DNA from: Convolutriloba macropyga
Lineage: Eukaryota
Assembly: GCF_964194025.1 (NCBI RefSeq)
Contig: NC_134468.1
Coordinates: 3,224,001 to 3,288,000 of the forward strand
Length of the DNA: 64,000 nt
Direction of reading: 5' to 3'
Shown in pieces: positions 27,225-49,210 of the stretch. Within the stretch, counting starts at the first letter, position 1, and each line of letters starts with the position of its first letter. The position numbers were made by a program, and so were the translations under genes. Under the pieces are notes generated by a model that made no database searches, was not told the DNA's origin, and saw only the letters and a program-made list of their open reading frames with translations.

Positions 27225-27229
27225 GAACT

Positions 27230-27633
27230 CCCTTGTTCACATGTCAAGTTTTCCAAATAAAGGAAAGACAACACTTTTCGCTTCTTCAAGAAGACGTCGA
27301 AAGGCATCGGAAATTTGTTGTTGACAGATTATTATCAAACTGTTTGTATTCATCATCTCATCAGCTCATAATTTCTTGAATAGCATTTGTTTCAAGAAAC
27401 AGGGAGATTATATCCCACTTTTTCCATTGGTCTAACCGTCTTGCAATTGTTTAATACTTGAGCCGTCATCGTCCGTTTTCTTTCCGGCAACAATGAGACG
27501 GTATTACTATTATGCAGTATATTGCCTTGCCGTCTCCGTGTTAGAATAAAATGGCACAAACGATTTCATTCAAGGTATCGGTGAATTTAAAGCTTTTCTT
27601 GTTTCTTGGCAGCATAAAAACGATTTCGAGCAA
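27230..27633 (-). pseudogene. Old fragment related to the CRE-like element (region upstream of RT)
   Basis: 'ccgtcatcgtccgttttctt...atgagacggta' at ~27460-27505 resembles 'ccatcgtccgtgttctt...' at ~39108-39150 (LPHL.L...K.DDGS peptide). Confidence 0.45.
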
Positions 27634-28575: not shown

Positions 28576-28704
28576 CTGCCCTCTCTTTGCGAGAATAAAG
28601 TGCAACACACTCTCAAAGTCAAACGAAATGTTCATTCACTGATCTTGTTATATGAACGTCTTGCTGTAAAAAAAATTAGTATTTTCATATGTAAAGCTTA
28701 TTTA

Positions 28705-29596
28705 TCAGTTTCCGCTGTTCATAAATTTTCCTGCCTTGTCAATTCCAAATATGTTGTACGCTTCTCTCGCCGCATCATTTGTCAGAATTTGATTTGCCCG
28801 GATGATGGTCTTGAAGAACCCTTTGTCTCCACCAGCATCAGGGTGCTTCAACAGGCTCAATTTGTGATAGCGTTTCCTGATTTGATCTTTTCGAAGCAGA
28901 ACTGAACTTTTTATCAACGGAATCTCATATAGCGTAGCAGTCCGGTTCATAATAATTTTGTTTTAATTCTCGAATAAAGATTTCTCAGTGGCCTTTGTTT
29001 TAGAGTTTTTGTTTCTAGGAGAGGGTTTTTGTCGAATCTTTTTTCCGCATTCTTTGGCCAAATACTGGTCGTAGTTTTTCCAGCTGCTCGAGCTCTGACC
29101 GCAATTGGTCATACATTTTCTCAAATTCTTAAATGATTTTCCCCTTTTTAGCAGCATTGACTTTCAAATCGGCCAACTTTTGATTTAATACCTCTATAGA
29201 ATGCTCCTGATGAGCATTTCTGGCTGATGCTGCCTTTAAGTTTTCTCGTTACCCCTCACAATGAGCGCTCCATTTCCCCAATACTTCTTTTGTTGCTTCT
29301 GTGGTCTTGTTGCAATGGTTTCCAGTTCTTGTCAAAGCTCAACGAGGTCTTTTTGAAGTGAGGAGTTAGTGCTCTTCATTTTCTCTAACTGCGAGGACTG
29401 ATTTTGCAGTTCCACTTCAGTCTTCAGAGCACGCAACCGAATATTGGCGGATGCCAGAAGTTCTAGTCTAGAAACTTTCCAAGACCGCTACAGACAGGAT
29501 TCCATTCGGTACATTCCCGGAAAAATCTCGGCAACAGTTTTCCACAATTCTAGCTTGTAGAACACATCATTTTTGCTTCTAAAGTTTCTCGACATT
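28705..29596 (-). pseudogene. Disrupted intronless ORF: coiled-coil region plus C-terminal J (DnaJ) domain (28705-28950)
   Basis: TLYEIP...KDQIRKRYHKLSLLKHPDAGGDKGFFKTIIRANQILTNDAAREAYNIFG has J-domain helices and the HPD motif. Upstream frames are E/K/L/Q-rich with stops. Confidence 0.75.
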
Positions 29597-29639
29597 TTCA
29601 ATCTTGAACTCAATTTTTTTCCTTTTTTCCTGTTGTCTT

Positions 29640-30222
29640 TTGGTCTCGAACTCGAAACGTATCCTTTCTTCTGTTTTTTTTTTTGGTCTTGAACTCAAGA
29701 CAATTTTTTTGGTCTTGACCTCGAAACGTTGCCTATCTTTTTTCTTTTGATCTCAAACTCGAGACGTTCCCTTTTTTTGGTCTCGAAAGACAAAATTTTT
29801 TTGTTCTCGAACTCGAGACAACTTTTTGGTCTCAACCTCGAGACGTTTCTTTTTTCTTTTTTGGTCTTGAACTGAAGTCAATTTTTGGGTCTCGAACTCA
29901 AGAAGTTTCCTTTCTGGTTTTTTTTTGGTCTGGAACTCAAGACATTTTCTTTCTACTTTTTTTGGTCTCAAATTCGAGACGTTGCCGTTTTTTTGGTTTC
30001 GAAAGACAATTTTTTTTTGGTCTCGAACTCGAGACAACTTTTTGGTCCCGACCTCGAGCCGTTTCTTTTTTTTTGGTCTTGAACTCAAGTCAATTGTTTG
30101 GTCTCGAACTCGAGAAGTTTCCTTTCTGTTTTTTTTTTGGTCTTGAAATCAAGACATTTTCTTACTACTTTTTTGGTCTCAAACTAGAGACGTTCCCGTT
30201 TTTTGGTCTTGAATTCAAAACA
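29640..30222. repeat. Array of ~19 imperfect palindromes GTCTCGA-AC-TCGAGAC separated by T-tracts; higher-order period ~213 bp
   Basis: Direct reading. The variant order repeats at ~29749, 29963 and 30175. Confidence 0.9.
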
Positions 30223-30339
30223 AAGTTTTTTTGTTTTTTCTTTCAACAATTGATTATTTTATGGACCCTTTTTCTTCAACCATTTTCTTTTGTTCTCGGC
30301 GTTCATTCTTTAATTTGATTAAATGATTATACATACGTA

Positions 30340-31935
30340 TTCCCATTACGGAGTCAAGATTCCGCAATAGTTGTTAACAAGACGCTCCATTAATAATTAA
30401 TCCTAAACATATTAACAATTTAGGAAGTAAATTTTTACAACTTGAAAAATGAGGTAGAGTGCTAAGAATGACACAGCAATTTCCTTCGTTTTTAACCAGA
30501 TGTATAAGCACTCAGTTTTTAATTCCGAAAAATGGTTATTTCAGTTGCTAGAATAATTTCCTGCTCGTTCCAGTGAATAAAATTTTTATGACTGTAATTT
30601 TCATCCGAATCTGTGAATGCTTCCCGACTGATAATTTCACGACTATTGTGGCGAAATGTTCAATTTGAAATGTTCAAATGTGGCAATTTGAAACTGTTTT
30701 CATCGTGATGTGGAGAAAAAGCTGCTGCGATGCAGGTTTTCATCATTTACATTTAAGTTACAATTGAGCGACCACTGATATATCTCACGATTGAATTTAT
30801 TCAGCCGTTTCTCCGTTTTGTTTAAAACTGCCGTCTTCCTTTTGACAAAATTCGATTACAGCCAGTTGCATGAAACTGTTTCGTAATTATGATACAAATT
30901 TTGTAATAGATCTGTAATCATGATACAAAATGTAAGGGTGTGCATATATCTAATAGAAGAAAAGTTCTGACACTCTAATAACAAAGGAGCTTCTGTGCAA
31001 AAAGGAATTGTTGTTATTGTTGCAACCAGCTTGGCACATTTATGAAAATTTAAAACAGATCCTGTTTTTTCAAAAAATTTTATTGCAAATTTTTCATATT
31101 TGCTTTTGTGTAAAATTTTTCTTCTGTTAAAAGTGGTCGTGTGGTTACCAAAAATTTTTGCAGGGTCATTCTTATGAAACTGCTTGATCGTTTGACATGT
31201 TTGCTAATCTTTATTTTCAAAAAAATTTTTACTTATTTGTCTTCGAAGTGTGTGGCTTTGATGAAAACAGTTTTCCAGAACCGTAGGGGATCCTTAAAAT
31301 TTAATAGATTTCTTTGTAGCAGCTTTCCCCAAATTGTTCCGAAGTTAATTTTTGCACTAATTACCACATTTCCTATAAGCTTTTCTCCTTTAGGTGAAAC
31401 CCACTGCACAGGTTGTTCATACATAGCGCCTTCGTGTCAATTTTTTTGCCATGAAGCTTTGACTATGCACTTCTACATAAAAGGTTTTGCTGTCTTGTCG
31501 TGAAATCGTTTTAGTTACCGACCTGATGACTTTATAAGTCCTATCCTCAAAACTTGGTATGAGAAAATTCTTCTTCTGTCAATTGTTTCTGCAAGTTCCC
31601 TCAATAAAAGGGAATACTGATTCAAGTAGTTCTGAAATTTCTGTGAGAAAAATGACATCGTCATATACGATTCTCTTTTAAGCGCAGACACTTTATATAC
31701 CGCTTCATACATGCAAATATTTAGTTTTATCTCAGGCTGAACCTCAGTTTATATTATTTTTTCCATTGTTATTGGTACTCTGATTTTTCAATCACAGTTT
31801 GTACTGTGATCTAGAGAATAGATCTTTGCTGACACGGTATTGTCAAAACATAACCCTATAACTTGTTACATGGTGATGGAGAAGCAAAAAAAAACTAGCA
31901 ATGCCAGATACAGACATAGTGATACTCCCTCATAC
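30340..31935 (-). pseudogene. Probable env-like glycoprotein ORF remnant of the Gypsy element
   Basis: Starts MGVSLCLYLALLVFF (signal-peptide-like), then Cys-containing GLCFDNTVSAKIYSLDHSTNC, and ends in hydrophobic LPKLLICLGLIING. Lies directly 3' of integrase. Frameshifted. Confidence 0.5.
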
Positions 31936-32299
31936 GATCCTCCGGAAAAACTCGCCTTTCTTTTCAATTCTATTATCTCTTTCTAAATTTTCCTGAAACC
32001 AAACATCATCAGTTTTCTGACTGCTAAAGTACTCTTCATCTTGCTCAGTAAAGTAATTCTTTGAATTCTCAGGCACCAATTTTAATGGGCTGCTACTTTG
32101 TAGTCATTTTTGGTGCTTCGGGATCAATATTAACCTCTTCTTTAGTACATTTTGTTTTACTACAAGATGTGTGTGGTTTTTTCTCTGGTTTTGGACTTTT
32201 TGATTCTGCTGCTTTTTTTAGCGTACTCTTTAAGTTTCAACAAACTGCACCTCCTCTCTCGGCAACTTTGTTTGCCTTCTCAAGCTCTTTAGAGGTTTC

Positions 32300-35200
32300 T
32301 TACTCTGATTCTTTAGCTTCATTCTCAGACGTGTCATTTGTAACATTTAATGAATCGTTAGCATCCTCAGCTTCAGATTGATTTTCTGTGTTTAGATTAC
32401 TTTCACTGTCTTTGGAAGATTCCATTTCTTTTTTATCATCAAAGTCTGAGCTGTTCAAATCAATTTTTTCTGCCCATTTACTGTTTTTTCCCTTTTGCTC
32501 AGGAGCGAATGACTTTTCTCCTGTTTTATGCTTTTTCAGTTGGTCATAATGGACCTTCCTCCTCTTTTTATGTTCTACTTGGAAGTTCAAATTGTTTAAA
32601 ATTTCAACTATTGTGTATAGCTCTATATAAAAAGAAGTCAATTTTCTTGTTTTTTTTTAAAGTTGGGTTGGAAACTAACATTTCTTCGCCAACCTTATAG
32701 CTCGTTCAATACCTACTGCAATCATAATAGGTCTTCTGGCGTTATTGTTTGAATCCATATGTTCTCGCATCAACTAATCCGTTTCCTGTAGTTTGTTTTT
32801 TCATTGTGAAAACACAGGGACTTGATATTGCATATATTTTGGTGTGTGGTTTGCTATAGATGCAGTATATAGGTGGGAACAATGGAAAACCCAGTACCAC
32901 ATATGCTGGGCTGTATTTTTTACCTTAGGGATTGATGTTCGATAGACCATCATCGCTAAGGGCAGAAATTTGGTCCACTCATTTTGATATTGGCCTATTC
33001 ATTTAGAGAGACGTTCATCTATTGTCCGATTTTTTCTTCTTTCAATCATCGCGTTCCGTTGTGGTTGTTAGGACGTTATTGATGTCTTCTGAGTTCCTAG
33101 TTCAATGCAAAGACTACGAAATAGTTTTGACATAGAGTTCGACCCTTGTTCACTGTGTACTTGACAGTGTTCAGCAAACACTCTTGAGACGGTTTTTGCC
33201 TCTTAGTTGGGTAAAGCTACCGCTCCATAACACTTACTGAATTGATCACCGAGACGCAAAAGGTACTTGTTTCCCTGAGACTCGTGAAATGGATCCATGA
33301 TATCAAGAGATACTTGCCAAAATGGTTGTCTAGGTTTCAATTTTGCGAGTGAATGCCGATGTTAGTGCCTTAGCTTTTTAGGGCACATGTCACAGTTTTC
33401 AATACAGTTTCTTACGTCCCTCCTCATGCACGGCCAATGAAACCTTTCAGAAGCCTTCTGGTACGTTTCCTCAATCCGAAAATGACCTGCGCTAGGAGAG
33501 TCATGCAACAGTTCAAGCACGTTGGACACTCTCTACCATTGTACAGCCATTTGGTAAACGGTCTCCTCAAAGTTAGGTTCTGTTTTGTGTTTACCATACA
33601 AAGTCCCTTCTATGAGACAAAGGTTTGTACACTGAACGCAGTATTTCCATAATTCTTTGGATGCTCCAATTTTTATTTGCCCTGTTCCTGTTTTTTGTTC
33701 AGAACCCAGGTGCATATTTCTCTGAGTAGCGTGTCATTTTAATGCAAATCTCGTAGTTTTACTCTCTGCAGTTTTTCTAACTGCTAACCTCAACTGACAT
33801 AATCGTAATGATTGCTCTGCGTCTATCGCAATAGCGTTAACAAAAGCTGTTTGTTCATCATCATCATCAGTCAGTTTGCGCGACAGACAGTCGGCGAGTG
33901 GCGTTGCCTGCTGCACTATGCTTGATGTCAAAGTTAAATTGCCCAAATTTCTCTGTCCATCTTGCAACCATACTGTCCGGTTCTTTAAAACTATAGATCC
34001 AGTCACGAGTCTGCTGGTCCGTTATAATTGAAAAGTTCTCACTAAGTAACAAAATTTTAAAATGTTGCGTAAAATGAACAATTGCAAGTAATTTGGCTTA
34101 GTTGCTGAACAATATTGCTGAGTTTTACTCATAGTTTTGCTAGCATATGCAATAACTCTATTCTCCGGTCCTTGTTTCTGGGTAACAATTGCTCCATTTC
34201 TTGTCAACGAACCATCCGTAGTTAATGTTGATATATACGGATCCCTATTATTTGTATATTATAAAACTGGGACATCCAGAAGCCTCTTCTTTAACTCCGT
34301 TACCGCATTTTTGCACTTTGGATTTCAATTAAATTTTTTTGACATTTTCAGTAGCCTGTTAATAGGTCCTGCTGTTTTTTCGAAACCCGGAATAATTTTT
34401 CGATAATAGCCCACAAGAGCTCGAAAGGCCCAGACACCTCTCAGGGAGGATGGTTCTTTCATTCTCTCTGCCGATCTTACTTTCTCTGGGTTGACCTCGA
34501 CCCCATTCTTGGATATAATGTGCACCAAGAAGCTGACACGCTCTTAGAAAAAACTGCATTTTGATCCCTTAATCTTTAATCCATTCTCCGCTAAACGTTG
34601 GAATACCAGTTCTAATTGTTTCATATGTTCGTCGAAATTTCTTCCGAAAACGATAACGTCATCTAGATACACTAGAGCCGTTTCGTAAGAGAGGCCAGCA
34701 AAATCAACCTCACTATAATTTGAAAAATTCCCGGTTCAGAGGCTAGTCTTTTAGGAATACTTTGCCAGTTATACAGGCCCAGAGGCGTTATTAAAGCTGT
34801 TAAATTCTGACTCTTTTCTTCGAGCGCCATCTGGAAGTCACCCGACTGGAGATCTATGGGGACTATTGTAATGTTTTTCCCAATTTACCCGCAAAAAGGT
34901 TGGTTTTTTTCTGGTGTTGAAAATACAGTCAAAATTATATAAGACTTCGTTGCCCAAGAAACAAGGCGTTATCTCATTTTCGGTGACTAAAAACTCAAGT
35001 GTTATCTCAGATGTTAATTTTTGAAGTTGGACTTGAATAGCTGTTGACTTCTTTACAGGCACTTTTCCATTGCTGGCAGCTATTATTTTTTTATTGCACA
35101 CTCTGATCTGGCTCATTTCTCCCAGCTGTTGGTAGAGTGTGTCGCTTAAAATGTTAACACTACGTCCTCTATCAATTAAGACCATTATCAATATGTCTTT

Positions 35201-35772
35201 TATCAATATTTTGGCAATCAAGGCCTCCAATGGGCTGTTTCCGCCACGCACAATTTTTACGTAGATTGCTGAAAATGAAGCCCTGCTATCTTCAGCTAGT
35301 TCTCGTTTAAACACGGGCAATTTCGTTTGAAATGATTTGACTGCCACATTACCTAGATGCAAGATTTCTCTGACAGCAACGGCGACATCTTTCTCTCAAA
35401 GCTCACCGCTGTATTTGATTGCTCAGAACGACTCTCGTCCGTCCAATCTCGGCTTCTGATCTCTTCTCCTTGTGTTGGTGATCGCGCTCTTCTATCGTAT
35501 ATGGCTCGTCTATTATCAATTCTAATTCTTTATAGCTATTATAGTTTCTATTTTTCTATCTCCGGTTTCTCTAGAATGTCGCTCACCTCCGGAACCTCTT
35601 TGGGCCTCGACCCTTGCAATGAAAACTTGATTATCTTGCATGTTAGATTGGTTAGTCTATAATGTTTACACTAAATCATTAATCGAATTAAAGAGTTGAT
35701 TGTTTTCATTCGGATGGATGGCAGAAAACCGCGGCTCATTATCTTCCTCCTCAATTCATTTAGGGTCCAGGT
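32300..35772 (-). mobile_element. Degraded Gypsy LTR retrotransposon gag(3' end)-pol: protease, RT, RNase H, integrase
   Basis: Protease VLIDRGRSVNIL (ORF 34838-35362); LVYLDDVIVFG (~34645-34677); HIISKNGVEVNPEKV; RVIAYASKTMS; RFHWPCMRRDVRNCIENCDMC; FWQVSLDIMDPF; KVHYDQLKK. PR-RT-RH-IN order. Confidence 0.9.
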
Positions 35773-35773
35773 C

Positions 35774-35905
35774 CATGATGATAAAATTGACAGAGAGAAT
35801 CTGATTTGTTCACGAAGGCTTTGAAAAGTTTATTTGACTGTCGGAATCTTCAGTTAAGCACGTATCGAGATATTCAGATATAATAAGGTAGAATATGGAT
35901 CCAGT
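35774..35905 (-). promoter_or_regulatory. Copy of the ~135-bp conserved block
   Basis: catgatgataaaattgacagagag...ggtagaatatggatccag. Confidence 0.4.
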
Positions 35906-36019
35906 ATTTTGAAGCGCGGAGCACCATTCACCTAAGAAACACTATGGCAGTACATTGAGAACAACTGATTAAATGGATTTAAATTTTTGTTAGTGAAACA
36001 ATTGAAAAATTTGATTTAA

Positions 36020-36165
36020 AAAAAAACAACCTGGTGATATTGATGCCAGACGGGTGTCTCAGGGTGTGTTCTGTCACGAATCCACTCGCTGGGTGGTAAA
36101 GACAAGATCTGCAGAGCTAACTTACTAAATAGAAAACGCTATTTATTAAGTTTATCACAACGATT
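36020..36165 (-). ncRNA. 3' part of the interrupted target locus: SL-like motif AATCGTTGTGATAAACTTAATAAATAG, hairpin and downstream T-run; candidate SL-RNA-like gene or pseudogene
   Basis: Motif at 36139-36165. 14-bp stem 36119-36132/36139-36152 with one mismatch. GTAAGT at 36125-36120. Its 5' part (AGCCT plus TSD) lies at 40657-40675. Confidence 0.45.
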
Positions 36166-39100
36166 TTTTTTCTTTGTTTATACAATAAAAAAAGGACCGT
36201 GTACAACATCCGGCAACGATGGATGTAGGTCGGAACATAAGGGATGATGAGTAGCATTTAGACGGATGCTGCACTACAAGCTGTTCCCCTCCAGACAGTG
36301 TAAGGACGGCCCAGTCACAAAACTAACTAACANNNNNNNNNNNNNNNNNNNNNNNNNNNNNNNNNNNNNNNNNNNNNNNNNNNNNNNNNNNNNNNNNNNN
36401 NNNNNNNNNNNNNNNNNNNNNNNNNNNNNNNNNNNNNNNNNNNNNNNNNNNNNNNNNNNNNNNNNNNNNNNNNNNNNNNNNNNNNNNNNNNNNNNNNNNN
36501 NNNGTATGGAAGGGTTGAAATAAAAATAGGATATCAAGGAATAAGCAAAGGAAAAAAAAGTTAAGCAGCCAAACACTCGGTGCAGCCTTCCCTCCTTCAC
36601 GACAGCGCTAATTGAAATCTCACTGAGAGCACGAGACTTGAGGGCGCGAAACCCCATTAAGCAGAGAACACAGCTCCTCAGAAATTCGAAGCTGATTTTC
36701 GTTCGGATGTAGCTTATAGTGTCGGCGTACGGCTTTCCGCGTTTTTCGCTGATCTTGTTTGCGAGTTGTTTCATAGCGGGCAATAATGATGGCCCAGCAC
36801 CGCTGGAGCAAGCAAAAACCCGTGCGTTGAAACTGCTGTGTTCGGTTTCGCGGATTCGCTCTTCGTACTTATTTCGATTGATTCTCTCGTGATATTTGTA
36901 AGAATCTTTTATGTTCGTTGGGCAGCCCTTCGCGTGAGGGTTGAAAATCTTCACATCGCAAAAATGCCATTAAAGCGGGAGCCCCACAGACCGTTTGCCT
37001 TGATGTCCAGTCGAGCGTCGTCATCAGTAGTGGTGGAATTACTCGAGAAAATTTCTCGATCGCGCGACTGAAGTTTTGGCTTTATCTCGACATCGTGGCA
37101 AATGTCATCCATCAGGTTTGCAAACACGTCTTTGATTTTGTTGTGTCCTAGGTCGGTATACTTTCTGTGGCGCAATGTAGGGCATGATTGAGGCTAAATT
37201 CTTTCACGCATGGGACTATAGCTGGCGTGTTCTTTGCTTCCCAGGTGTAGCGAGGTGCTATTCCATCACGGAATTCAGTCTTCGTGAGGTCAAAACCATG
37301 TTTTGATAACGGAAGCGCGTTAAACCAGCTAGATGCTCCTTTCTCCGAGGCCAGCTGGATTGTATACTTAATTTCTGGTAGATTGTTTTCGATTCTGGAT
37401 TTTTTTCGAGATGAGTTCACGTTGCATGTCTGCTTTCTGTCTGAGACTGATCTTGGTTTGATCTAATTCACATTGTTGAATTTCGAATGAATCATTATTG
37501 AATGACGCCAATGGACCTGAGAGTTCAATTGATTGCTCATGACTTTTAGAAGGATCTTGTGGGAGGGTGATGTTAAGCCCACCCATTCTGAGAGGGAGAG
37601 AGAAAAGTTCTCTTTCCTCTTGGATTATTTCTTTGCCGACGATGTTCGGTGTGACTCGGCCAAGTCGCTCCTCCATCTTGTCCAGAACCCCGTCCATGGA
37701 GGGTGTAGTACGCGAGAAGAAGCTCAACTTCTGTTGAACCCCCTTCGTCAAACATGCATAGGCATTCTGGGGAGAGATGAGAGCAAACTGACCAAGTCTG
37801 TCCAAACTTTCTGTGTATTCAATTTCTGCATCTTTCAGGAAATACTTACTGGCCTCAGAGCTACCGATAACCGATCCCAGGACTCGAGCGCCGTGTGTGA
37901 TTTCCACATTAGTGCCTGAAATCACAGTTGACGCTTGGCACTGGCCTCCTGGCTTAATTATCAACTGACACTTCGGAGGATTGACAAGATATCCGTACTT
38001 GGGACCAAGCTGAATGAGCTTGTCGAAGAGTGTCAGATATCTTTTAACTTACCGACGGCGCTACTCGTAAGCATACCATTTTTGTGTCAAGGAGTCATTG
38101 TGAAGTCTTGATATTAGGGGTAGGATTGGAGTTCCATAGCTTGCCATCGCAAGGGGATCGCCTTGTGTTGTACCTTCCTGAGACAGAATGGTCGAATTAT
38201 CGATGTAGAGAAAAAACGGATGGCTATAGGAATACTGTATGGCAATATGCAATGATGGGCATAAGGTCTTCACGTTCTCTAATGCTGTTCTTCTATTCAG
38301 CACGTTAATTGCGTTTTTGGCATCAATTAGTAGAATTGCTTCGTTTTCGGGATCATCAAAACTGTGGCGAAGCGAGTGTATGGCATGTTCTATGCCGCAT
38401 TTCTGGCCCAGGCACAGCTTCACGTTTCTACCGAGGGATGTTAGATCTTGCCTGATGCAGCCGACGATTATGTGACTGGTGATGCGACGCATTACTTCAC
38501 CAATAACAATAGGTCTCAATCCTGGACATTTATCCAGAGCCACTAGTTGACATCCAATGTATGCAATCAAATCATCCAGTAGTATTACGGACGTGGCCAG
38601 CCTCTTAGCAAACTTGGCAACAAGCTTGCACATGTTCATGGAGGTTTGCCCGAAAGCAGAAAGTAGTCTACGCCAGTCATCGGCATCGAGACCTGAAGGC
38701 CCGGCACTGCCATGAGTCTTCATTGCATTCTTTCGAACGAGCCTGGCACTGATTTTTTTAAAACAGCGGCGTGGTAGGGAAGCGTGCTTGGATGTTCGCT
38801 CTGAATGCAGTTGGGCTCCGAGGGTTGCCTTTCAGGATGTTTGTTGCGTAAGATCTCGAGGACCGGTCTACCGTCTATGAGATCGGTAGGAGCGAGCACG
38901 CCGCTTTTAAGCTCATCCGAAATAACGCGAATAGCAATACTGATCTGACCACGAAAGATGAAATCGTTGAGCATCTTGAGGTCAGAGTGCTGCTTTTTAT
39001 TCCTTGAGTTCATTCTCATTTGGATTGCCTTCGCTTCACAGAACAGTTCCGAGAAGTTGCAGCTGTGCTATTCACGCAGTCTACGCTTCATGATCTTTTT

Positions 39101-39489
39101 GTTTGATCCATCGTCCGTGTTCTTTGTTCGACTAAGAGTTAAGTGCGGAAGTATCATACAGAGGGTCAGAGATATATCGGATCTATCCGTGTTTACGGAA
39201 ATCGGGGAGAGGACACTGTGAAGGGCTTCGGCGAACTGTTCCCCTGTCTTGTTTCTACTGAGCGTGGAGAACGAGGGCTTCCATTTGACGACCTCGCGGT
39301 ATATTTTGCGCACTGTTACCGCGTGATGAGGCTGGAATTTGTCCCAAAATTTATCTAATGGTGCGGCGACGGAACGTTCTGGGTCGTGCGATGTTGCAGG
39401 ATCTATTAGTGCAGTGTCGGGAACGGTCTAATCATTGTGTGGTGCCGGCGTTGCGATTGCTGTTTCGGTGGCTGCGGTGACCGCAGAGC

Positions 39490-39613
39490 AGCTTTTGCAG
39501 CTGAAGTGTTCGATCCACTCTTTCGCTGCCGCTAGGCCACTGCATTTCACGTGAAAAAATTTATAACACGTATGACACCACCCCTACGTAGGGGACCCTT
39601 GAAGAGTGGACAA
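39490..39613 (-). pseudogene. PHD-finger remnant at the N-terminus of the CRE ORF2 (copy at ~44634-44757)
   Basis: Minus strand translates to WCHTCYKFFHVKCSGLAAAKEWIEHFSCKSC. A degenerate first Cys pair (CPLF) lies upstream across a frameshift. Confidence 0.7.
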
Positions 39614-39672
39614 TGGGTTTGATCAGCCGTCAGGCTTCGAGCTAGGAGTGGGGAAGGCTGTACTGAGGGGGA

Positions 39673-40242
39673 CTAGGTTAAGTTAATTACATGAGAGTAA
39701 TAGCGGCATCGATATTTAACGTATTGAATGATGTTAAACAGAATAATATTGAAAACATGGTTTCCAGGAAAGGACAAGTGCAGAGGGTCTTTACAGAACA
39801 GCTTAGGCTCAAGAACATTCCTAGATGAGGATAAAACAATAAACAGCTTGAAGGCACAAGAATCAGTATAATTATACAAAGCGTAGTTAAGGGCACTAAT
39901 TTTCTTATTTGTGGGGCGATTACAACTGGTGGGTATAACATTAGGAACAAACAAATTATTTGGGCTAAAATTCACAATTATGAGCTGAATGAGGAATTTC
40001 CAATGCTCTATGAAAGTTTCAATACTACTACGGTGATCATTAAAGCCAGCGATTACTACAATAGTGTTCATTTTCTGATTTGGGTGTTGATTGACAACAT
40101 CACAGAGGTCTAGCAGTTTAGCACCTCGATAGAAATGTACAAAACCCTGTACTTGACCCTCGTATTTATATTTGGTACGATAAGTGCCCAAGACGAAGTC
40201 TGAGCAGCTGGAGGGAAGAGGGTTGTCATCAAAACGTCCCAT
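39673..40242 (-). CDS. SGNH/GDSL-hydrolase (esterase)-like ORF1 of the CRE element, 189 aa
   Basis: Blocks in SGNH order: FVLGTY (block I position, Ser absent), YRGAKLLDL (II), IVVIAGFND (III), CKDPLHLS..GN (V, DxxH). Confidence 0.75.
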   Translation of the reverse strand: MGRFDDNPLPSSCSDFVLGTYRTKYKYEGQVQGFVHFYRGAKLLDLCDVVNQHPNQKMNTIVVIAGFNDHRSSIETFIEHWKFLIQLIIVNFSPNNLFVPNVIPTSCNRPTNKKISALNYALYNYTDSCAFKLFIVLSSSRNVLEPKLFCKDPLHLSFPGNHVFNIILFNIIQYVKYRCRYYSHVINLT

Positions 40243-40561
40243 TCACGGAGCCTGCTAACATTCAGAACACAAGAAATTGCTCTAAAAATGAAATCAGTTA
40301 TATGGTACAACTTGATATGATGAAGGAAAATGGTTGGAATCAATACATCACTTTCACGGAGCCCGCTAACATTCAAAAACACAATAAATTGTTCTAATAA
40401 TGGAATCAGTTGGAATGATACGACCTGATGTGATGAGTCGGGGTGGGAGATTGGTTCACTCGCCTACGACTGGGGTGGCGAGGCTTGAAAAGGTGTAGGT
40501 TTGATTCAGCCCAGCGCGCATACGTATTTGAAAATACAGCGGAGGTAAATTTGTTCGGGAG

Positions 40562-40675
40562 CTATTTAATAAGTTTATCCCAACAATTAAGATGGACCGA
40601 TTAGTTTTCGCAAGCTTGGCCTATTTAATAAGTTTATCACAACAATTAGGCTACGATTATCACAACGATTAGGCT
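40562..40675 (-). other. Cluster of SL-like motif copies: degenerate (40562-40590), full 32-nt AGCCTAATTGTTGTGATAAACTTATTAAATAG (40621-40652), target 5' half (40657-40675); duplicated at ~45706-45819
   Basis: Directly visible in sequence. SL identity is inferred. Confidence 0.6.
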
Positions 40676-40805
40676 CATGATGATAAAATTGACCGACAGA
40701 ACCTTATTTGTGCAGGAAGGCTTTGAAATGTTTATTTGCTGTCGCAATATTCGGATAAACAAGTATCAAGACGTGCAGATGTAATATGGTAGAATATGGT
40801 TCCAG
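40676..40805 (-). promoter_or_regulatory. Conserved ~135-bp block immediately upstream of the SL-like target (copy at 45820-45949)
   Basis: Abuts the first base (A of AGCC) of the target motif. Confidence 0.45.
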
Positions 40806-41282
40806 TTTCCCGGAAATGTGAAAATAAATTTTTTTGAAATTTTGTAGTAAAAGCTGATTAATCCCCTCTTATTGTGTTTATTTTCCAATGATTCATCAAC
40901 TGAAGCGTTTTACGAAAAATGAAAATCTGAATTTTTGGACGCATTGGGTCAATTTGGTTCTATTGAAACAGGTATTTAAGTGTTTATTTTAATCAAAATC
41001 AGTTATTTTAAGTTTCTTGAGCCTTAATTATAGGAAAATGTAGTCATTGTTTTCTGAGCTCCTTTCAAAAATTATCAGTACGTTTTTGTTTGCTCTACGA
41101 TGAAGCTCTTCAGTTTTACGCATGAGGGACTGCGGGCGCTGAGGTGCTCTTCTGACACAGAAAATTTGAATCTATTCAACCCCATAACCCCACCCCCTCC
41201 CCCGTTTCATCGGCATGCAAATTTTCTGCGCAAATTTTTGGCGCAGGCACCCAATTTTAACGTGCTATGTAACAATACAAAT

Positions 41283-42641
41283 ACTGAAGAACACAAACAA
41301 AACATAAGTCTACTGAAGAACGTCTCAAAAGTCTTCGAGAAAGTCATCTTGGAACGGCTTTACCCCACCGATAGAAAGAACTCTCTCTGACTCCCAACAC
41401 GGTTTCGGAATGAAAAGATCAGCAGTCCTTCAAATCATCCTCTTCACAGACGAACTATACCAGCAACTTGAATCGAAAAAATGCATTAACATTCGAACTC
41501 TTTATGTTGACTTCAGAAAAGCCTTTGACAAAGTAGCGCACAAAAGACTCTTTCAGAAGCTTGAGGAAATTGGCCTCGGAGGAAAGCTACTCCAGATACT
41601 CAAACGCTATCTCACAAACCGAACGAAATGCGTCAAAATTGGGACAAGCAAATCAAAGACCAGAAATAAAACCAACGGAGTATCTCAGGGATCAATTTTG
41701 GGGCCTTTGATGTTCATCATCTACATTGAGGATCTCCCCGAAGAAATCTCAGACATCCTGGCCTTCGGATACGCGGATGATTTCAAAGCAATTATCCACG
41801 GAGACCACTCTCGGGGAAATACAGAAATGGAGCAAAGCAAACCATATGGACCTAAATGTTAGCAAAAGAAAAACTTTCCTCGTCAGAGGGGATCTAGCAT
41901 AGCGTGACGAGGCAGGTCTGGAAACCGTTGCCACCCAAAAAGATCTCGGAGTCGTAATGTCTCAAAATCTCTCTTGGAGCGCAAACTGCCACCATAGAAC
42001 AACCAAAGCGTGGAAAGCCTTCTACACACTCAAACGAACTCTTTCGAGCAGAACCTCAATGGAAACGAAACTGAACGCGTATATAGGATCCGTGCCCATA
42101 CTCACGCCTCCCAAGTCTGGTACCCGTCGAAGTCTGACATGAAATCAATCGAGAAGATCCAGCACAAGGCCACAAAGTGGATATGCGGTGGAGACGAAGA
42201 ATACCATCAAAGACTCGAAACACTGAAAATACTCCCACTCTCCATGTTACTGGAAATGCACGATGCCCTCTATCTCCTCTCAATCCTAGAAGGCAATTAC
42301 TACGTCCCCGAAGACAAACTGCACAAGCAAAAAGAAAACGAAACAAGACAAAAGCAGGAATTTGAACTCCCCAAACACCGACTACAGAAATCAGACAAAA
42401 CTTCTTCAGAGCCACAAAGCTATACAACATCATCAGAAGAACAACGGAGAAGCCAATGGCAAAGAAACTTCTGACAGAGATGTACCAAAACTACTTCCAC
42501 AGAAGCTACAACGAACTCAACAGCTGCACCTGGAGACTTCTATGCAACTGTGGACTCTGCAATCCAATGAAAAACTCTTGCCAATCGAAAACAAGGGTTT
42601 ACACCCGTGGGCTCCGACCCTAAAGACCTACTACTACAAAT
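41283..42641 (+). mobile_element. 5'-truncated CR1-type LINE with short (CTA)n tail; possible TSD tacaaat (41276-41282/42635-42641)
   Basis: ISLLKNVSKVFEK, QHGFR, YVDFRKAFDKVAH, GVSQGSILGPLMF, YADDFK, KDLGV, IEKIQHKATKWI. Frameshifted. Confidence 0.9.
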
Positions 42642-42845
42642 TGTAATTGGGAGGCATAAAGAATAACGAGCAGGGAGGGGGACAGAATAGATCCGAAAAT
42701 TCTGTAACGGCAAGAGGGGGGGAGACTACCCAAACCTACAGTTTATATATATTCATGTTTTCTGACCTTTGTTTTATACCTGACGATATTTGACTACCTT
42801 CAAAATTTATACATGTGCACAGGAGTTGACTGGCTGTCCCCGAGT

Positions 42846-45800
42846 TACGCGAGAAGAAGCTCAACTTCTGTTGAACCCCCTTCGTCAAACATGCATAGGC
42901 ATTCTGGGGAGAGATGAGAGCAAACTGACCAAGTCTGTCCAAACTTTCTGTGTATTCAATTTCTGCATCTTTCAGGAAATACTTACTGGCCTCAGAGCTA
43001 CCGATAACCGATCCCAGGACTCGAGCGCCGTGTGTGATTTCCACATTAGTGCCTGAAATCACAGTTGACGCTTGGCACTGGCCTCCTGGCTTAATTATCA
43101 ACTGACACTTCGGAGGATTGACAAGATATCCGTACTTGGGACCAAGCTGAATGAGCTTGTCGAAGAGTGTCAGATATCTTTTAACTTACCGACGGCGCTA
43201 CTCGTAAGCATACCATTTTTGTGTCAAGGAGTCATTGTGAAGTCTTGATATTAGGGGTAGGATTGGAGTTCCATAGCTTGCCATCGCAAGGGGATCGCCT
43301 TGTGTTGTACCTTCCTGAGACAGAATGGTCGAATTATCGATGTAGAGAAAAAACGGATGGCTATAGGAATACTGTATGGCAATATGCAATGATGGGCATA
43401 AGGTCTTCACGTTCTCTAATGCTGTTCTTCTATTCAGCACGTTAATTGCGTTTTTGGCATCAATTAGTAGAATTGCTTCGTTTTCGGGATCATCAAAACT
43501 GTGGCGAAGCGAGTGTATGGCATGTTCTATGCCGCATTTCTGGCCCAGGCACAGCTTCACGTTTCTACCGAGGGATGTTAGATCTTGCCTGATGCAGCCG
43601 ACGATTATGTGACTGGTGATGCGACGCATTACTTCACCAATAACAATAGGTCTCAATCCTGGACATTTATCCAGAGCCACTAGTCGACATCCAATGTATG
43701 CAATCAAATCATCCGGTATTATTACGGACGTGGCCAGCCTCTTAGCAAACTTGGCAACAAGCTTGCACATGTTCATGGAGGTTTGCCCGAAAGCAGAAAG
43801 TAGTCTACGCCAGTCATCGGCATCGAGACCTGAAGGCCCGGCACTGCCATGAGTCTTCATTGCATTCTTTCGAACGAGCCTGGCACTGATTTTTTTAAAA
43901 CAGCGGGGTGGTAGGGAAGCGTGCTTGGATGTTCGCTCTGAATGCAGTTGGGCTCCGAGGGTTGCCTTTCAGGATGTTTGTTGCGTAAGATCTCGAGGAC
44001 CGGTCTACCGTCTATGAGATCGGTAGGAGCGAGCACGCCGCTTTTAAGCTCATCCGAAATAACGCGAATAGCAATACTGATCTGACCACGAAAGATGAAA
44101 TCGTTGAACATCTTGAGGTCAGAGTGCTGCTTTTTATTCCTTGAGTTCATTCTCATTTGGATTGCCTTCGCTTCACAGAACAGTTCCGAGAAGTTGCAGC
44201 TGTGCTATTCACGCAGTCTACGCTTCATGATCTTTTTGTTTGATCCATCGTCCGTGTTCTTTGTTCGACTAAGAGTTAAGTGCGGAAGTATCATACAGAG
44301 GGTCAGAGATATATCGGATCTATCCGTGTTTACGGAAATCGGGGAGAGGACACTGTGAAGGGCTTCGGCGAACTGTTCCCCTGTCTTGTTTCTACTGAGC
44401 GTGGAGAACGAGGGCTTCCATTTGACGACCTCGCGGTATATTTTGCGCACTGTTACCGCATGATGAGGCTGGAATTTGTCCCAAAATTCAAAATTTATCT
44501 AATGGTGCGGCGACGGAACGTTCTGGGTCGTGCGATGTTGCAGGATCTATGAGTGCAGTGTCGGGAACGGTCTAATCATTGTGTGGTGCCGGCGTTGCGA
44601 TTGCTGTTTCGGTGGCTGCGGTGACCGCAGAGCAGCTTTTGCAGCTGAAGTGTTGGATCCACTCTTTCGCTGCCGCTAGGCCACTGCATTTCACGTGAAA
44701 AAATTTATAACACGTATGACACCACCCCTACGTAGGGGACCCTTGAAGAGTGGACAATGGGTTTGATCAGCCGTCAGGCTTCGAGCTAGGAGTGGGGAAG
44801 GCTGTACTGAGGGGGACTAGGTTAAGTTAATTACATGACAGTAATAGCGGCATCGATATTTAACGTATTGAATGATGTTAAACAGAATAATAGTGAAAAC
44901 ATGGTTTCCATGATAGGACAAGTGCAGAGGGTCTTTACAGAACAGCTTAGGTTCAAGAACATTCCTAGATGAGGATAAAACAATAAACAACTTGAAGGCA
45001 CAAGAATCAGTATAATTATACAAAGCGTAGTTAAGGGCACTAATTTTCTTATTTATGGGGCGATTACAACTGGTGGGTATAACATTGGGAACAAACAAAT
45101 TATTTGGGCTAAAATTCACAATTATGAGCTGAATGAGGAATTTCCAATGCTCTATGAAAATTTCAATACTACTACGGTGATCATTAAAGCCAGCGATTAC
45201 TACAATAGTGTTCATTTTCTGATTTGGGTGTTGATTGACAACATCACAGAGGTCTAGCAGTTTAGCACCTCGATAGAAATGTACAAAACCCTGTACTTGA
45301 CCCTCGTATTTATATTTGGTACGATAAGTGCCCAAGACGAAGTCTGAGCAGCTGGAGGGAAGAGGGTTGTCATCAAAACGTCCCATTCACGGAGCCTGCT
45401 AACATTCAGAACACAACAAATTGCTCTAAAAATGAAATCAGTTATATGGTACAACTTGATATGATGAAGGAAAATGGTTGGAATCAATACATCACTTTCA
45501 CGGAGCCCGCTAACATTCAAAAACACAATAAATTGTTCTAATAATGGAATCAGTTGGAATGATACGACCTGATGTGATGAGTCGGGGTGGGAGATTGGTT
45601 CACTCGCCTACGACTGGGGTGGCGAGGCTTGAAAAGGTGTAGGTTTGATTCAGCCCAGCGCGCATACGTATTTGAAAATACAGCGGAGGTAAATTTGTTC
45701 GGGAGCTATTTAATAAGTTTATCCCAACAATTAAGATGGACCGATTAGTTTTCGCAAGCTTGGCCTATTTAATAAGTTTATCACAACAATTAGGCTACGA
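42846..45800 (-). mobile_element. Duplicated 5' two-thirds of the CRE element (3'-truncated by the duplication breakpoint)
   Basis: Near identity to 37709-40656. Confidence 0.92.
44817..45386 (-). CDS. SGNH-hydrolase-like ORF1, duplicate copy, 189 aa
   Basis: Same motifs as 39673-40242 with a few substitutions. Confidence 0.75.
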   Translation of the reverse strand: MGRFDDNPLPSSCSDFVLGTYRTKYKYEGQVQGFVHFYRGAKLLDLCDVVNQHPNQKMNTIVVIAGFNDHRSSIEIFIEHWKFLIQLIIVNFSPNNLFVPNVIPTSCNRPINKKISALNYALYNYTDSCAFKLFIVLSSSRNVLEPKLFCKDPLHLSYHGNHVFTIILFNIIQYVKYRCRYYCHVINLT

Positions 45801-46425
45801 TTATCACAACGATTAGGCTCATGATGATAAAATTGACCGACAGAACCTTATTTGTGCAGGAAGGCTTTGAAATGTTTATTTGCTGTCGCAATATTCGGAT
45901 AAACAAGTATCAAGACGTGCAGATGTAATATGGTAGAATATGGTTCCAGTTTCCCGGAAATGTGAAAATAAATTTTTTTGAAATTTTGTAGTAAAAGCTG
46001 ATTAATCCCCTCTTATTGTGTTTATTTTCCAATGATTCATCAACTGAAGCGTTTTACGAAAAATGAAAATCTGAATTTTTGGACGCATTGGGTCAATTTG
46101 GTTCTATTGAAACAGGTATTTAAGTGTTTATTTTAATCAAAATCAGTTATTTAGGTTTCTTGAGCATTAATTATAGGAAAATGTAGTCATTGTTTTCTGA
46201 GCTCCTTTCAAAAATTATCAGTACGTTTTTGTTTGCTCTACGATGAAGCTCTTCAGTTTTACGCATGAGGGACTGCGGGCGCTGAGGTGCTCTTCTGACA
46301 CAGAAAATTTGAATCTATTCAACCCCATAACCCCACCCTCTCCCCCGTTTCATCGGCATGCAAATTTTCTGCGCAAATTTTCGGCGCAGGCACCCAATTT
46401 TAACGTGCTATGTAACAATACAAAT

Positions 46426-47785
46426 ACTGAAGAACACAAACAAAACATAAGTCTACTGAAGAACGTCTCAAAAGTCTTCGAGAAAGTCATCTTGGAACGG
46501 CTTTACCCCACCGATAGAAAGAACTCTCTCTGACTCCCAACACGGTTTCGGAATGAAAAGGTCAGCAGTCCTTCAAATCATCCTCTTCACAGACGAACTA
46601 TACCAGCAACTTGAATCGAAAAAATGCATTAACATTCGAACTCTGTATGTTGACTTCAGAAAAGCCTTTGACAAAGTAGCGCACAAAAGACTCTTTCAGA
46701 AACTTGAGGAAATTGGCCTCGGAGGAAAGCTACTCCAGATACTCAAACGCTATCTCACAAACCAAACGAAATGCGTCAAAATTGGGACAAGCAAATCAAA
46801 GACCAGAAATAAAACCAACGGAGTATCTCAGGGATCAATTTTGGGGCCTTTGATGTTCATCTTCTACATTGAGGATCTCCCCGAAGAAATCTCAGACATC
46901 CTGGCCTTCGGATACGCGGATGATTTCAAAGCAATTATCCACGGAGACCACTCTCGGGGAAATACAGAAATGGAGCAAAGCAAACCATATGGACCTAAAT
47001 GTTAGCAAAAATAAAACTTTCCTCATCAGAGGGGATCTAGCATAGCGTGACGAGGCAGGTCTGGAAACCGTTGCCACCCAAAAAGATCTCGGAGTCGTAA
47101 TGTCTCGAAATCTCTCTTGGAGCGCAAACTGCCAACGTAGAACAACCAAAGCGTGGAAAGCCTTCTACACACTCAAACGAACTCTTTCGAGCAGAACCTC
47201 ATTGGAAACGAAACTGAACGCGTACATAGGATCCGTGCCCATACTCACGCCTCCCAAGTCTGGTACCCGTCGAAGTCTGACATGAAATCAATCGAGAAGA
47301 TCCAGCACAAGGCCACGAAGTGGATATGCGGTGGAGACGACGAATACCATCAAAGACTCGAAACACTGAAAATACTCCCACTCTCCATGTACCTGGAATT
47401 GCACGATGTCCTCTATCTCCTCTCAATCCTAGAAGGCAATTACTACGTCCCCGAAGACAAACTGCACAAGCAAAAAGAAAACGAAACAAGACAAAAGCAG
47501 GAATTTGAACTCCCCAAACACCGACTACAGAAATCAGACAAAACTTCATCAGAGCCACAAAGCTATACAACATCATCAGAAGAACAACGGAGAAGCCAAT
47601 GGCAAAGAAACTTCTGACAGAGATGTACCAAAACTACTTCCACAGAAGCTACAACGAACTCAACAGCTGCACCTGGAGACTTCTATGCAACTGTGGAATC
47701 TGCAATCCAATGAAAAAACTCTTGCCAATCGAAAACAAGGGTTTACACCCGTGGGCTCCGACCCTAAAGACCTACTACTACAAAT
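46426..47785 (+). mobile_element. Duplicate of the CR1-type LINE
   Basis: Near identity to 41283-42641. Confidence 0.9.
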
Positions 47786-49210
47786 TGTAATTGGGAGGCA
47801 TAAAGAATACTGAGCAGGGAGGGGGACAGAATAGATCCGAAAATTCTGTAACGGCAAGAGGGGGGGGGGAGACTACCCAAACCTACAGTTTATATATATT
47901 CATGTTTTCTGACCTTTGTTTTATACCTGACGATATTTGACTGCCTTCAAAATTTATACATGTACACAGGAGTTGACTGGCTGTCCCCGAGTTTGCAGAC
48001 TGTCCTTTAGGGGAAGGGGGCTTTCTGTCAGTTGACAGTTTAAAATACGTTTATGCTAGTCAGCCCTATTTTCAGTAGGAATAATGTTGTTCATGGTAAA
48101 ACAGAATTTCAATTTTAAGTTTGAATCGGAAAAGTTGTTTAAGAATCCACACTTTATTATTTTTGATCAAGAACTACGGAATGATCGGAGGAAAATCAGA
48201 AACATGCATTATATAGTTGCTTGGTTTTTTATCTGATGGTGAAAAGTTGTATCGGCATTTTGTTAGTATTCAATAATACGTGCATATGCTTGGTAAACGT
48301 TTGTTCGCAGTACTGTTATTTTTAGTACTGACTGAAGAATAACGTCATTTTATTTAAAGAACATTGGTATTTATCCTGATGGTAATATGAACAACACGCA
48401 AACGTGCGATCAATTGCGTCAGCTTCTCTTTAAGAGGTAAACACGTTGATTACATTAGCTAAGTTCACGACAGTCATATAAATATCGAATGTTAAAAGCT
48501 GCCTTTCATTTTCTCAAAATTCTGTTGAAGTCGCTATATCTTAATTTATCATTTTCTCACGAACGTGAGCTGACAAAATGGTCTGATTTCTCCAAAATGT
48601 GAATTGTAAGTATAGAAGCCGTAATTCAATTCGGTTGATTGCCTGTTTTAAAGCTGTGCTTTGATAACTGTTTTTTTTTCAGTTGGGCTATTTGGTAAAA
48701 CTGCTGTGTTAGCAGTAAAGCAACTCAGGACTATCAACTATGAATAACTGAACTTGGAAATTCTGCAGAGATGCTGCACCAAAAAAGACAATTAGTTGAA
48801 CCAGTGACAAAGGACAACTCCAACGACGACCACGACCAAGCTTTGACGAATTGTGCGGCAAACCTTAGGCAATTCTATTGGCGATATTACTTCAAGGAGT
48901 GCTTTCTAATACGAAGCTGCCAACGAGTCTAGGTCGATTTATATAGGCAAATTCTCTCAGGAGAGAGAGAGGAAGTCAATCTAGCAATATAGAAACTTTT
49001 TAGAAAAGAATTTTCAATTTTAATATCAACTGACTTCATTTTAGTGCAAATAACTCTTACTTTATAAATTACACAATCGTGAATATTCACTGCGTGAGGT
49101 ATTAACTTGGTTAACTGATTGAGAAGGGAGTGAATAACGTTCTTATATTATCTCTGTGCGAGTTATTGGGAATTAAAAAGCGCGGTGAAAAGTGACGGAT
49201 CAGGGTGAAA

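What the first reader, a model, noticed from the sequence alone, without database searches (positions are those of the whole stretch)
36119..40675. CRE-clade retrotransposon inserted with an exact 14-bp TSD into a spliced-leader-like 32-nt motif
Seen: on the minus strand the 5' flank is ...catg AGCCT-AATCGTTGTGATAA | element, and the 3' flank is A-tail | AATCGTTGTGATAA-ACTTAATAAATAG. Removing the element rebuilds AGCCTAATCGTTGTGATAAACTTAATAAATAG, a 32-nt AT-rich unit ending in AG, with no ATG, that also occurs inside the element. Established: RLE-type elements are often sequence-specific; trypanosomatid CRE/SLACS/CZAR and nematode NeSL target SL RNA genes. Inference: this is an SL-targeting CRE family in an animal with SL trans-splicing, and I know of no description of it.
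Basis: partly seen in the sequence, partly recalled or inferred. Interest (0 to 1): 0.92.

Follow-up and report, generated by a model that had tools for sequence, protein, structure and literature searches.

The report
LINE inserted into a leader copy
A dead copy of a common jumping gene sits inside a DNA copy of this acoel worm's spliced leader, but 129 of 130 sister copies sit elsewhere and the roughly 1,200 real leader genes are untouched, so it is a one-off landing and not a leader-targeting element.

Summary
On the minus strand, a 4.5-kb non-LTR retrotransposon (40656 to 36166) is flanked by an exact AATCGTTGTGATAA duplication. Removing the element rebuilds a 32-nt unit. That unit is the published spliced leader (SL) of the acoel Symsagittifera roscoffensis (PMC9911081).

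The protein is RLE-type. Its best structural match in Swiss-Prot is SLACS of Trypanosoma, so "CRE-like" is reasonable.

The central inference, an SL-targeting family, fails.
- 29 of 29 sampled sister copies have unrelated 3' flanks.
- Only 1 of 130 exact 3'-end tags in the genome is followed by SL sequence.
- Other copies have 9-13-bp duplications at unrelated AT-rich sites.
- None of the listed copies lies in the SL RNA gene arrays, and 1,190 of 1,235 SL RNA genes have an intact exon.

The split target is not an SL RNA gene. It is the diverged SL fossil at the 5' end of an older, related LINE.

The SL copies inside the element are leaders acquired by trans-splicing of its RNA before retrotransposition. 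Many sister copies carry one at their 5' end. The scan found the same SL-headed pattern on other DNA of this genome (s1-234588).

Verdict: an ordinary nested insertion and a new member of a known kind.

The parts
40657..40675 (-). 5' part of the split target leader (AGCCT plus the 14-bp target-site duplication at 40670-40657)
   Evidence: the same variant C as in the 3' copy
40653..40656 (-). 4 extra bases (TCGT) at the 5' junction
   Evidence: not in the target and not in sister copies
40621..40652 (-). Leader 1: a perfect copy of the host spliced leader (A plus the 31-nt published SL) at the element's 5' end
40591..40620 (-). 30-nt spacer between the two leaders, unique to this insertion and its local duplicate
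   Evidence: only 2 matches in the genome, both in this window
40562..40590 (-). Leader 2: a 5'-truncated leader with 1 mismatch, at the position where sister copies carry their (often diverged) leader
40243..40561 (-). 5' UTR, with a roughly 112-bp tandem repeat (40436-40211)
39673..40242 (-). ORF1 (189 aa, open). It has no Pfam match but has homologues in the target family
36580..39663 (-). ORF2 remnant (PHD-like finger, reverse transcriptase, CCHC plus restriction-like endonuclease). It has at least 5 frame changes, and the reverse-transcriptase YADD active-site motif reads YAYE followed by a stop. It is 90.5% identical in DNA to a copy with an open 1028-aa frame
36333..36503 (.). Assembly gap inside the 3' UTR. 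The flanks are collinear with a sister copy
36166..36579 (-). 3' UTR and short A-rich tail (tail about 36179-36166)
36139..36165 (-). 3' copy of the duplication (36165-36152) plus the rest of the target leader (36151-36139)
35909..36138 (-). 5' UTR of the older, leader-headed LINE that was hit (family B). It continues at 28138-27886 beyond a 7.8-kb insertion
42846..47993 (.). Tandem duplicate (98.9%) of 37709-42846. It repeats the 5' junction, so the second junction is not an independent insertion

Best explanation
This is a dead copy of an abundant, non-site-specific, CRE-like LINE with a restriction-like endonuclease, in an acoel genome.

Its RNA was trans-spliced to the host spliced leader before it was copied back into DNA, so the copy begins with the leader. 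This copy carries two leaders: an inherited one, and a newer perfect one 30 nt upstream.

Target-primed reverse transcription placed it, with the family's usual 9-14-bp duplication, into an AT-rich site. That site happened to be the DNA-encoded leader at the 5' end of an older, distantly related LINE. The leader-in-leader arrangement is a coincidence made likely by the more than 1,200 retro-copied leaders in the genome. It is not target specificity.

Shown: the duplication, the identity of the leader, the unrelated flanks of the sister copies, the nature of the target, and the untouched SL RNA genes. Inferred: trans-splicing as the source of the 5' leaders, and chance as the reason for this site.
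For: Identity of the motif:
- It equals the published S. roscoffensis SL.
- About 2,558 copies lie in the genome with diverse flanks on both sides.

No site specificity:
- 29 of 29 sister 3' ends (92-96% identical) are followed by unrelated DNA.
- Of 130 exact 3'-end tags, only the window's has SL sequence within 40 nt.
- An A-run followed by the SL 3' part occurs only twice in the genome.
- Matched ends of other copies give the duplications ATTATTGTTAATT and ATTTTGAAG at unrelated sites.

Leaders at sister 5' ends:
- At least 12 sister copies start with their own leader, intact or diverged, directly next to unrelated DNA.
- The leader joins the element body at differing points, one of them directly after an AG.

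Nature of the target:
- It belongs to a family with at least 103 candidate places in the first-pass search (40 were scored, 75-84% identical) whose homology begins exactly at the leader.
- It has no GT donor, and it continues into an ORF1 homologue (E down to 2e-19).

Real SL RNA genes:
- They read SL plus GTAAGTAT. There are 1,235 copies, and nearly all of the 100 places listed lie in tandem arrays on contig 9.
- 1,190 have a perfect, uninterrupted exon.
- None of the listed 3' tags or RT hits lies in the arrays.

Protein:
- RVT_1, E 1.7e-11.
- Invariant CCHC and acidic/lysine columns in 30 homologues.
- The model has mean pLDDT 87. Its best matches are SLACS (E 1.7e-25, TM 0.58) and R2, along the whole length.
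Against: For this family alone the chance expectation is small. With about 130-529 copies and about 1e5 leader positions in 1.18 Gb, about 0.01-0.04 hits are expected (my estimate).

Only 4 target duplications were compared, so a weak sequence preference cannot be excluded.

Trans-splicing of the element's RNA is inferred from DNA fossils. It was not seen in RNA.
Confidence: 0.85

Rival explanations
1. One reading: a CRE-clade family whose endonuclease recognises the spliced-leader sequence and inserts there specifically, as SLACS, CZAR and CRE do in trypanosomatids and NeSL-1 does in nematodes.
For: There is one clean insertion with a 14-bp duplication inside a leader sequence. The ORF2 model is closest to SLACS.
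Against: 129 of 130 3' tags are not next to leader sequence. 29 of 29 sampled flanks are unrelated. Other copies have duplications at other sequences. 1,190 of 1,235 SL RNA genes have an intact exon, and none of the listed copies lies in the arrays. The site that was hit is not an SL RNA gene.
Confidence: 0.03
2. A weak bias rather than pure chance. Either the endonuclease prefers AT-rich words of the ATTGTT/GATAA type that the leader happens to contain, or the leader on the element's RNA helps pairing at leader-like DNA. Leader copies would then be mildly favoured targets.
For: The four known duplications are all AT-rich, and two contain ATTGTT or TTGTT. The chance expectation for this family alone is only about 0.01-0.04.
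Against: The 5' junction is out of register with the target leader and has 4 extra bases, so no homology was used in joining. Only 1 of 130 copies is at a leader, although the genome holds more than 2,500 leader copies. The sample of 4 targets is too small to support a motif.
Confidence: 0.09
3. An assembly artefact. The junctions, or the nearby tandem duplication, could be mis-joins around the gap in a repeat-rich region.
For: There is a gap inside the element, and a 5.1-kb tandem duplicate at 98.9% identity. The published assembly of this species is larger than the measured genome.
Against: A unitig of a public run spans the 3' junction without differences, and unitigs of four runs run across the 5' junction, though with only 27 nt on the element side, short of the tool's 31-nt rule for bridging. 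The two sides of the gap are collinear with a sister copy. The duplication carries the same private variant at both ends.
Confidence: 0.03

Closest known systems
SLACS / CZAR / CRE1-2 (CRE clade, trypanosomatids)
   Same: One large protein with a reverse transcriptase followed by a CCHC motif and a restriction-like endonuclease. SLACS is the best structural match of the ORF2 model (E 1.7e-25, TM 0.58, residues 109-1004). The host uses SL trans-splicing.
   Different: Those elements sit at one fixed position of the SL RNA gene exon (established knowledge). This family is dispersed, with 129 of 130 copies away from any leader, and it spares the SL RNA gene arrays. It also has an ORF1 and a PHD-like N-terminal finger. 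Sequence identity to SLACS is only 16%.
R2 (rDNA-specific RLE LINE)
   Same: The same domain order. R2 proteins are the best solved structures (Foldseek E 5e-20; profile E 1.6e-6 over the RT). Insertion is by target-primed reverse transcription.
   Different: R2 is specific for the 28S gene. This family has no fixed target.
NeSL-1 (nematode SL1-gene-specific LINE)
   Same: An RLE-type LINE in an animal with SL trans-splicing.
   Different: NeSL-1 targets SL1 genes. Here the SL RNA genes are untouched. No sequence comparison was possible with these tools.
Relict spliced leaders of dinoflagellate retrogenes
   Same: DNA-encoded leaders at the exact 5' end of retro-copied RNAs, sometimes stacked. 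They record rounds of trans-splicing and reverse transcription (PMC6050394, PMC5585692, listed, compared).
   Different: Here the carriers are LINEs in an animal. The leader is 31 nt and of a different sequence.

Membership tests
CRE clade (SL-gene-specific RLE LINEs: CRE1/2, SLACS, CZAR) | Reverse transcriptase domain of the LINE type | tested here: met
   RVT_1, E 1.7e-11, in an intact sister ORF; 30 of 30 homologues match.
CRE clade (SL-gene-specific RLE LINEs: CRE1/2, SLACS, CZAR) | C-terminal CCHC motif plus a restriction-like (PD-(D/E)XK) endonuclease, and no AP endonuclease | tested here: met
   Invariant C816, C818, H826, C830, E861, D886, D903, K929. The model aligns to SLACS and R2 through residue 1004. 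The AP-endonuclease-bearing LINEs align only up to about residue 730.
CRE clade (SL-gene-specific RLE LINEs: CRE1/2, SLACS, CZAR) | The RT groups with CRE rather than R2, R4, NeSL or Hero in a phylogeny | tested here: inconclusive
   Only a structural ranking is available: SLACS first, R2 next. Reference sequences could not be obtained, so no tree was built.
CRE clade (SL-gene-specific RLE LINEs: CRE1/2, SLACS, CZAR) | Insertion at one fixed site of the SL RNA gene exon | tested here: not met
   1 of 130 3' tags is next to SL sequence. 29 of 29 sampled flanks are unrelated. 1,190 of 1,235 SL RNA genes are intact.
SL RNA gene (as identity of the target) | Leader followed by a GT splice donor | tested here: not met
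   The target reads ...AAATAG|CGTTTT. Real genes read ...AAATAG|GTAAGTAT.
SL RNA gene (as identity of the target) | A short RNA gene unit, typically in tandem arrays | tested here: not met
   The target family's homology runs on for more than 550 nt into an ORF1 homologue. Nearly all listed real genes lie in arrays on contig 9.
Leader-headed retrocopies (relict SL) | A DNA-encoded leader at the exact 5' end, identical or near-identical to the transcript leader | tested here: met
   Leader 1 is 31/31 identical to the published SL. Sister copies carry the same.
Leader-headed retrocopies (relict SL) | Upstream flanks unrelated between copies, and leader joined at acceptor-like points that differ between copies | tested here: met
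   12 copies with unrelated flanks. In L089-L091 the junction falls directly after an AG that L092 retains. One search shows the same pattern in another TE family.
Leader-headed retrocopies (relict SL) | The element's RNA is seen trans-spliced in RNA data | not tested
   The runs found are of unknown kind and are held only as contigs. DNA-encoded leaders would confound the test.

The most novel reading that the evidence does not exclude
The endonuclease of this CRE-like lineage keeps a weak residual affinity for leader-like AT-rich words, inherited from an SL-targeting ancestor shared with SLACS and CRE. Leader fossils would then be mildly preferred landing sites, even though the family is no longer site-specific.
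Probability: 0.05. Interest if true: 0.6.

Novelty: new member of a known kind. Interest (0 to 1): 0.27.

Why it matters
An SL-gene-targeting LINE in a bilaterian outside the nematodes would have been a striking parallel to the trypanosomatid CRE elements. The data show that this is not one.

What remains is useful but modest. A CRE-like, non-site-specific LINE family is abundant in an acoel. Its copies, like those of other LINEs here, begin with the host spliced leader. This marks full-length 5' ends, records repeated rounds of trans-splicing and retrotransposition, and adds more than 1,200 leader fossils to the genome.

Anyone annotating SL RNA genes or trans-splice sites in this genome must separate these fossils from the roughly 1,235 real genes, nearly all of the listed ones in arrays on contig 9.

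Tried and rejected
- Pfam on the eight broken ORF pieces of the window copy gave nothing. An intact sister ORF was needed.
- A single-sequence PDB search gave only a marginal R2 hit (E 0.21). The profile search and the fold search were decisive.
- A leader near the 3' end of a sister copy (L030) looked like a second case, but it lies about 285 bp beyond the element's end and is unrelated.
- The idea that the target is an SL RNA gene with a non-canonical donor was rejected. Its family begins at the leader, has no GT, and runs into an ORF1 homologue.
- The repeat upstream of the target (40806-40676, also at 35905-35774 and 14009-13881) is not part of the target family, since sister targets have unrelated upstream DNA. 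It was not followed further.
- A search for the source copy of the 30-nt spacer found nothing outside the window.
- An RT phylogeny against CRE, NeSL, R2 and R4 could not be built, because no reference sequences were obtainable.
- The public runs are of unknown kind and are held as contigs. They confirm the 3' junction, and less firmly the 5' junction, but say nothing about RNA 5' ends.
Full report
**Observation**

Read on the minus strand, the region holds a 4.5-kb element.
- The 5' junction is ...catcatg AGCCT AATCGTTGTGATAA (40670-40657), then TCGT, then the element.
- The 3' junction is an A-rich tail, then AATCGTTGTGATAA (36165-36152), then ACTTAATAAATAG (36151-36139).
- The 14-bp duplication is exact. 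Both copies carry the same private variant (AATCG where the canonical leader has AATTG), so it is a genuine target-site duplication. The first two A's could also belong to the tail.
- The motif occurs twice at the element's 5' end and twice more at 45.7 kb. Shuffled sequence gives none.
- The 45.7-kb copies belong to a tandem duplicate of 37709-42846 (98.9% identical). They are not a second insertion.

The assembly gap (36333-36503) lies in the 3' UTR, 77 nt beyond the last ORF2 homology. Its sides are collinear with an ungapped sister copy. I did not fill it.

Unitigs from four public runs cover the 3' junction without differences. They also run across the 5' junction, but with only 27 nt on the element side, fewer than the 31 the tool asks for before a record counts as bridging. 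The runs may come from the project that produced the assembly.

**What the motif is**

A full-text search for the motif found it in the genome paper of the acoel Symsagittifera roscoffensis. That paper reports GCCTAATTGTTGTGATAAACTTATTAAATAG(A) as the spliced leader reconstructed from transcript 5' ends, with 30% of genes trans-spliced (PMC9911081).

The genome (1.18 Gb) holds about 2,558 copies of the leader core. About half are real SL RNA genes:
- The leader is followed by GTAAGTAT in 1,235 copies.
- Nearly all of the 100 places listed are spaced about 1.06-2.8 kb apart in tandem arrays on contig 9 at about 23.14-23.78 Mb.

The rest have unrelated DNA on both sides.

**What the element is**

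The window copy is dead.
- ORF2 homology runs from 39663 to 36580 through at least five frame changes.
- The reverse-transcriptase YADD active-site motif reads YAYE followed by a stop.
- It is 90.5% identical in DNA to a sister copy with an open 1028-aa frame (L069).

That sister protein has these features:
- a PHD-like finger (weak match);
- an RVT_1 reverse transcriptase (E 1.7e-11);
- a C-terminal region with invariant CCHC and acidic/lysine columns across 30 homologues.

More than 1,000 homologues at 40-58% identity exist in animal assemblies, for example in a sponge.

A profile search of the PDB finds R2 proteins (E 1.6e-6). An AlphaFold model (mean pLDDT 87) gives these matches:
- It aligns along its whole length to R2 structures (E 5e-20).
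- In Swiss-Prot it aligns best to the SLACS 132-kDa protein of Trypanosoma brucei (E 1.7e-25, TM 0.58, residues 109-1004), ahead of R2.

"RLE-type, CRE-like" is therefore supported. A structural ranking is not a phylogeny, and I could not build one.

**Is the family leader-targeting?**

No.
- The 3' terminal 158 bp finds hundreds of candidates. In 29 of 29 sampled sister copies (92-96% identical), the DNA after the tail is unrelated to the leader and differs between copies.
- An exact 16-nt tag of the 3' end occurs 130 times. Only the window's copy has leader sequence within 40 nt.
- An A-run followed within 8 nt by the leader's 3' part occurs twice in the whole genome.
- Where both ends of other copies could be paired, the duplications are ATTATTGTTAATT and ATTTTGAAG, at unrelated AT-rich sites.
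- None of the listed 3' tags or RT hits lies in the SL gene arrays.
- 1,190 of the 1,235 SL RNA genes have a perfect, uninterrupted exon. The few listed exceptions sit at regular unit spacing, which suggests point differences rather than insertions.

**What was hit**

The 233 bp after the target leader belong to a repeat family with at least 103 candidate places in the first-pass search; the 40 that were scored are 75-84% identical.
- In 18 fetched members the homology starts exactly at a leader that is usually diverged. Upstream DNA is unrelated.
- The leader is followed by CGTTTGC, not by a GT donor.
- The homology runs on for more than 550 nt into a homologue of the element's ORF1 (28-39% identity, E down to 2e-19).

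In the window this older element continues at 28138-27886, beyond a 7.8-kb insertion.

The target is thus the leader fossil at the 5' end of an older, distantly related LINE. It is not an SL RNA gene.

**Why the element itself carries leaders**

At least 12 sister copies start with a leader that abuts unrelated flanking DNA.
- In one subfamily the leader is diverged and sits where the window copy has leader 2, which suggests it was inherited from a master copy.
- In others the leader joins the body at different points, one directly after an AG that a longer copy retains.
- Another TE family shows the same pattern, with alternative junctions.
- The window copy's perfect leader 1 and its 30-nt spacer are unique to this insertion.

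The simplest reading is that a source copy was transcribed from upstream, its RNA was trans-spliced at an acceptor 30 nt before the inherited leader, and that RNA was reverse-transcribed here. This step is inferred, not observed in RNA.

It matches the relict leaders known from dinoflagellate retrogenes (papers listed). It also matches an earlier follow-up in this scan on other DNA of the same genome (s1-234588).

**Chance**

Leader copies offer roughly 1e5 positions in 1.18 Gb. For 130-529 copies of this family, the expected number of hits is about 0.01-0.04 (my estimate). For all TE insertions in a genome that is about 60% repeats, tens of such events are expected. One seen by a reader looking for oddities is therefore unremarkable.

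A weak preference for AT-rich words of the kind the leader contains cannot be excluded with four known targets. The out-of-register 5' junction with four extra bases argues against homology-guided joining.

**Verdict**

The identification of the leader and of the element type is right. The claim of a leader-targeting family is refuted. This is an ordinary nested LINE insertion in a genome full of leader fossils.

Noticed in passing
G000 contig 9, about 23.14-23.78 Mb (outside the window): Huge tandem arrays of SL RNA genes (leader plus GTAAGTAT; 1,235 copies genome-wide, 1,190 with a perfect exon), on both strands. Unit spacings differ by multiples of about 188 bp, and occasional 7-26-kb irregular spacings could hold insertions.
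   Followed up: partly
window 37709-42846 and 42846-47993: A 5.14-kb tandem duplication (98.9% identical) comprising the element's 5' 2.95 kb plus 2.2 kb of upstream flank. It is either a real segmental duplication or an uncollapsed haplotype.
   Followed up: partly
window 40940-40683, 35905-35774, 14133-13881 (minus strand): An unclassified repeat ending in ...gtcaattttatcatcatg. It lies directly upstream of the target leader, again inside the older LINE, and a third time next to another assembly gap.
   Followed up: no
window 35908-28139: A 7.8-kb insertion interrupts the older leader-headed LINE between its 5' UTR and ORF1. Another reader called part of it a Gypsy element. No LTR pair was seen in a self-comparison of 27000-36200.
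   Followed up: partly
L032 (G000 C2:76711000-76718500), L034, L010, L013, L017, L018: Leader-headed units share a downstream block that looks like an Sm site plus hairpin (...ggccggacattgtttgggtagcccc...gggga). One set forms a 2.18-kb tandem array. They may derive from SL RNA or may be a SINE-like family.
   Followed up: no
L005, L009, L011, L014, L019-L021, L026: A different repeat family (body begins agatgagccagcgaggcatg) carries the leader joined at several alternative points, one just after tttcag. This is what alternative trans-splice acceptors would produce.
   Followed up: no
window 40436-40211; G000 C4:44802609-44803276: The element's 5' UTR contains a roughly 112-bp tandem repeat whose copy number varies between copies: about 2 in the window and at least 5 in a copy on contig 4.
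   Followed up: no
window 40242-39673 (minus strand): ORF1 is still open (189 aa) although ORF2 is broken. It has no Pfam match but is conserved (28-39% identity) in the older target family.
   Followed up: partly
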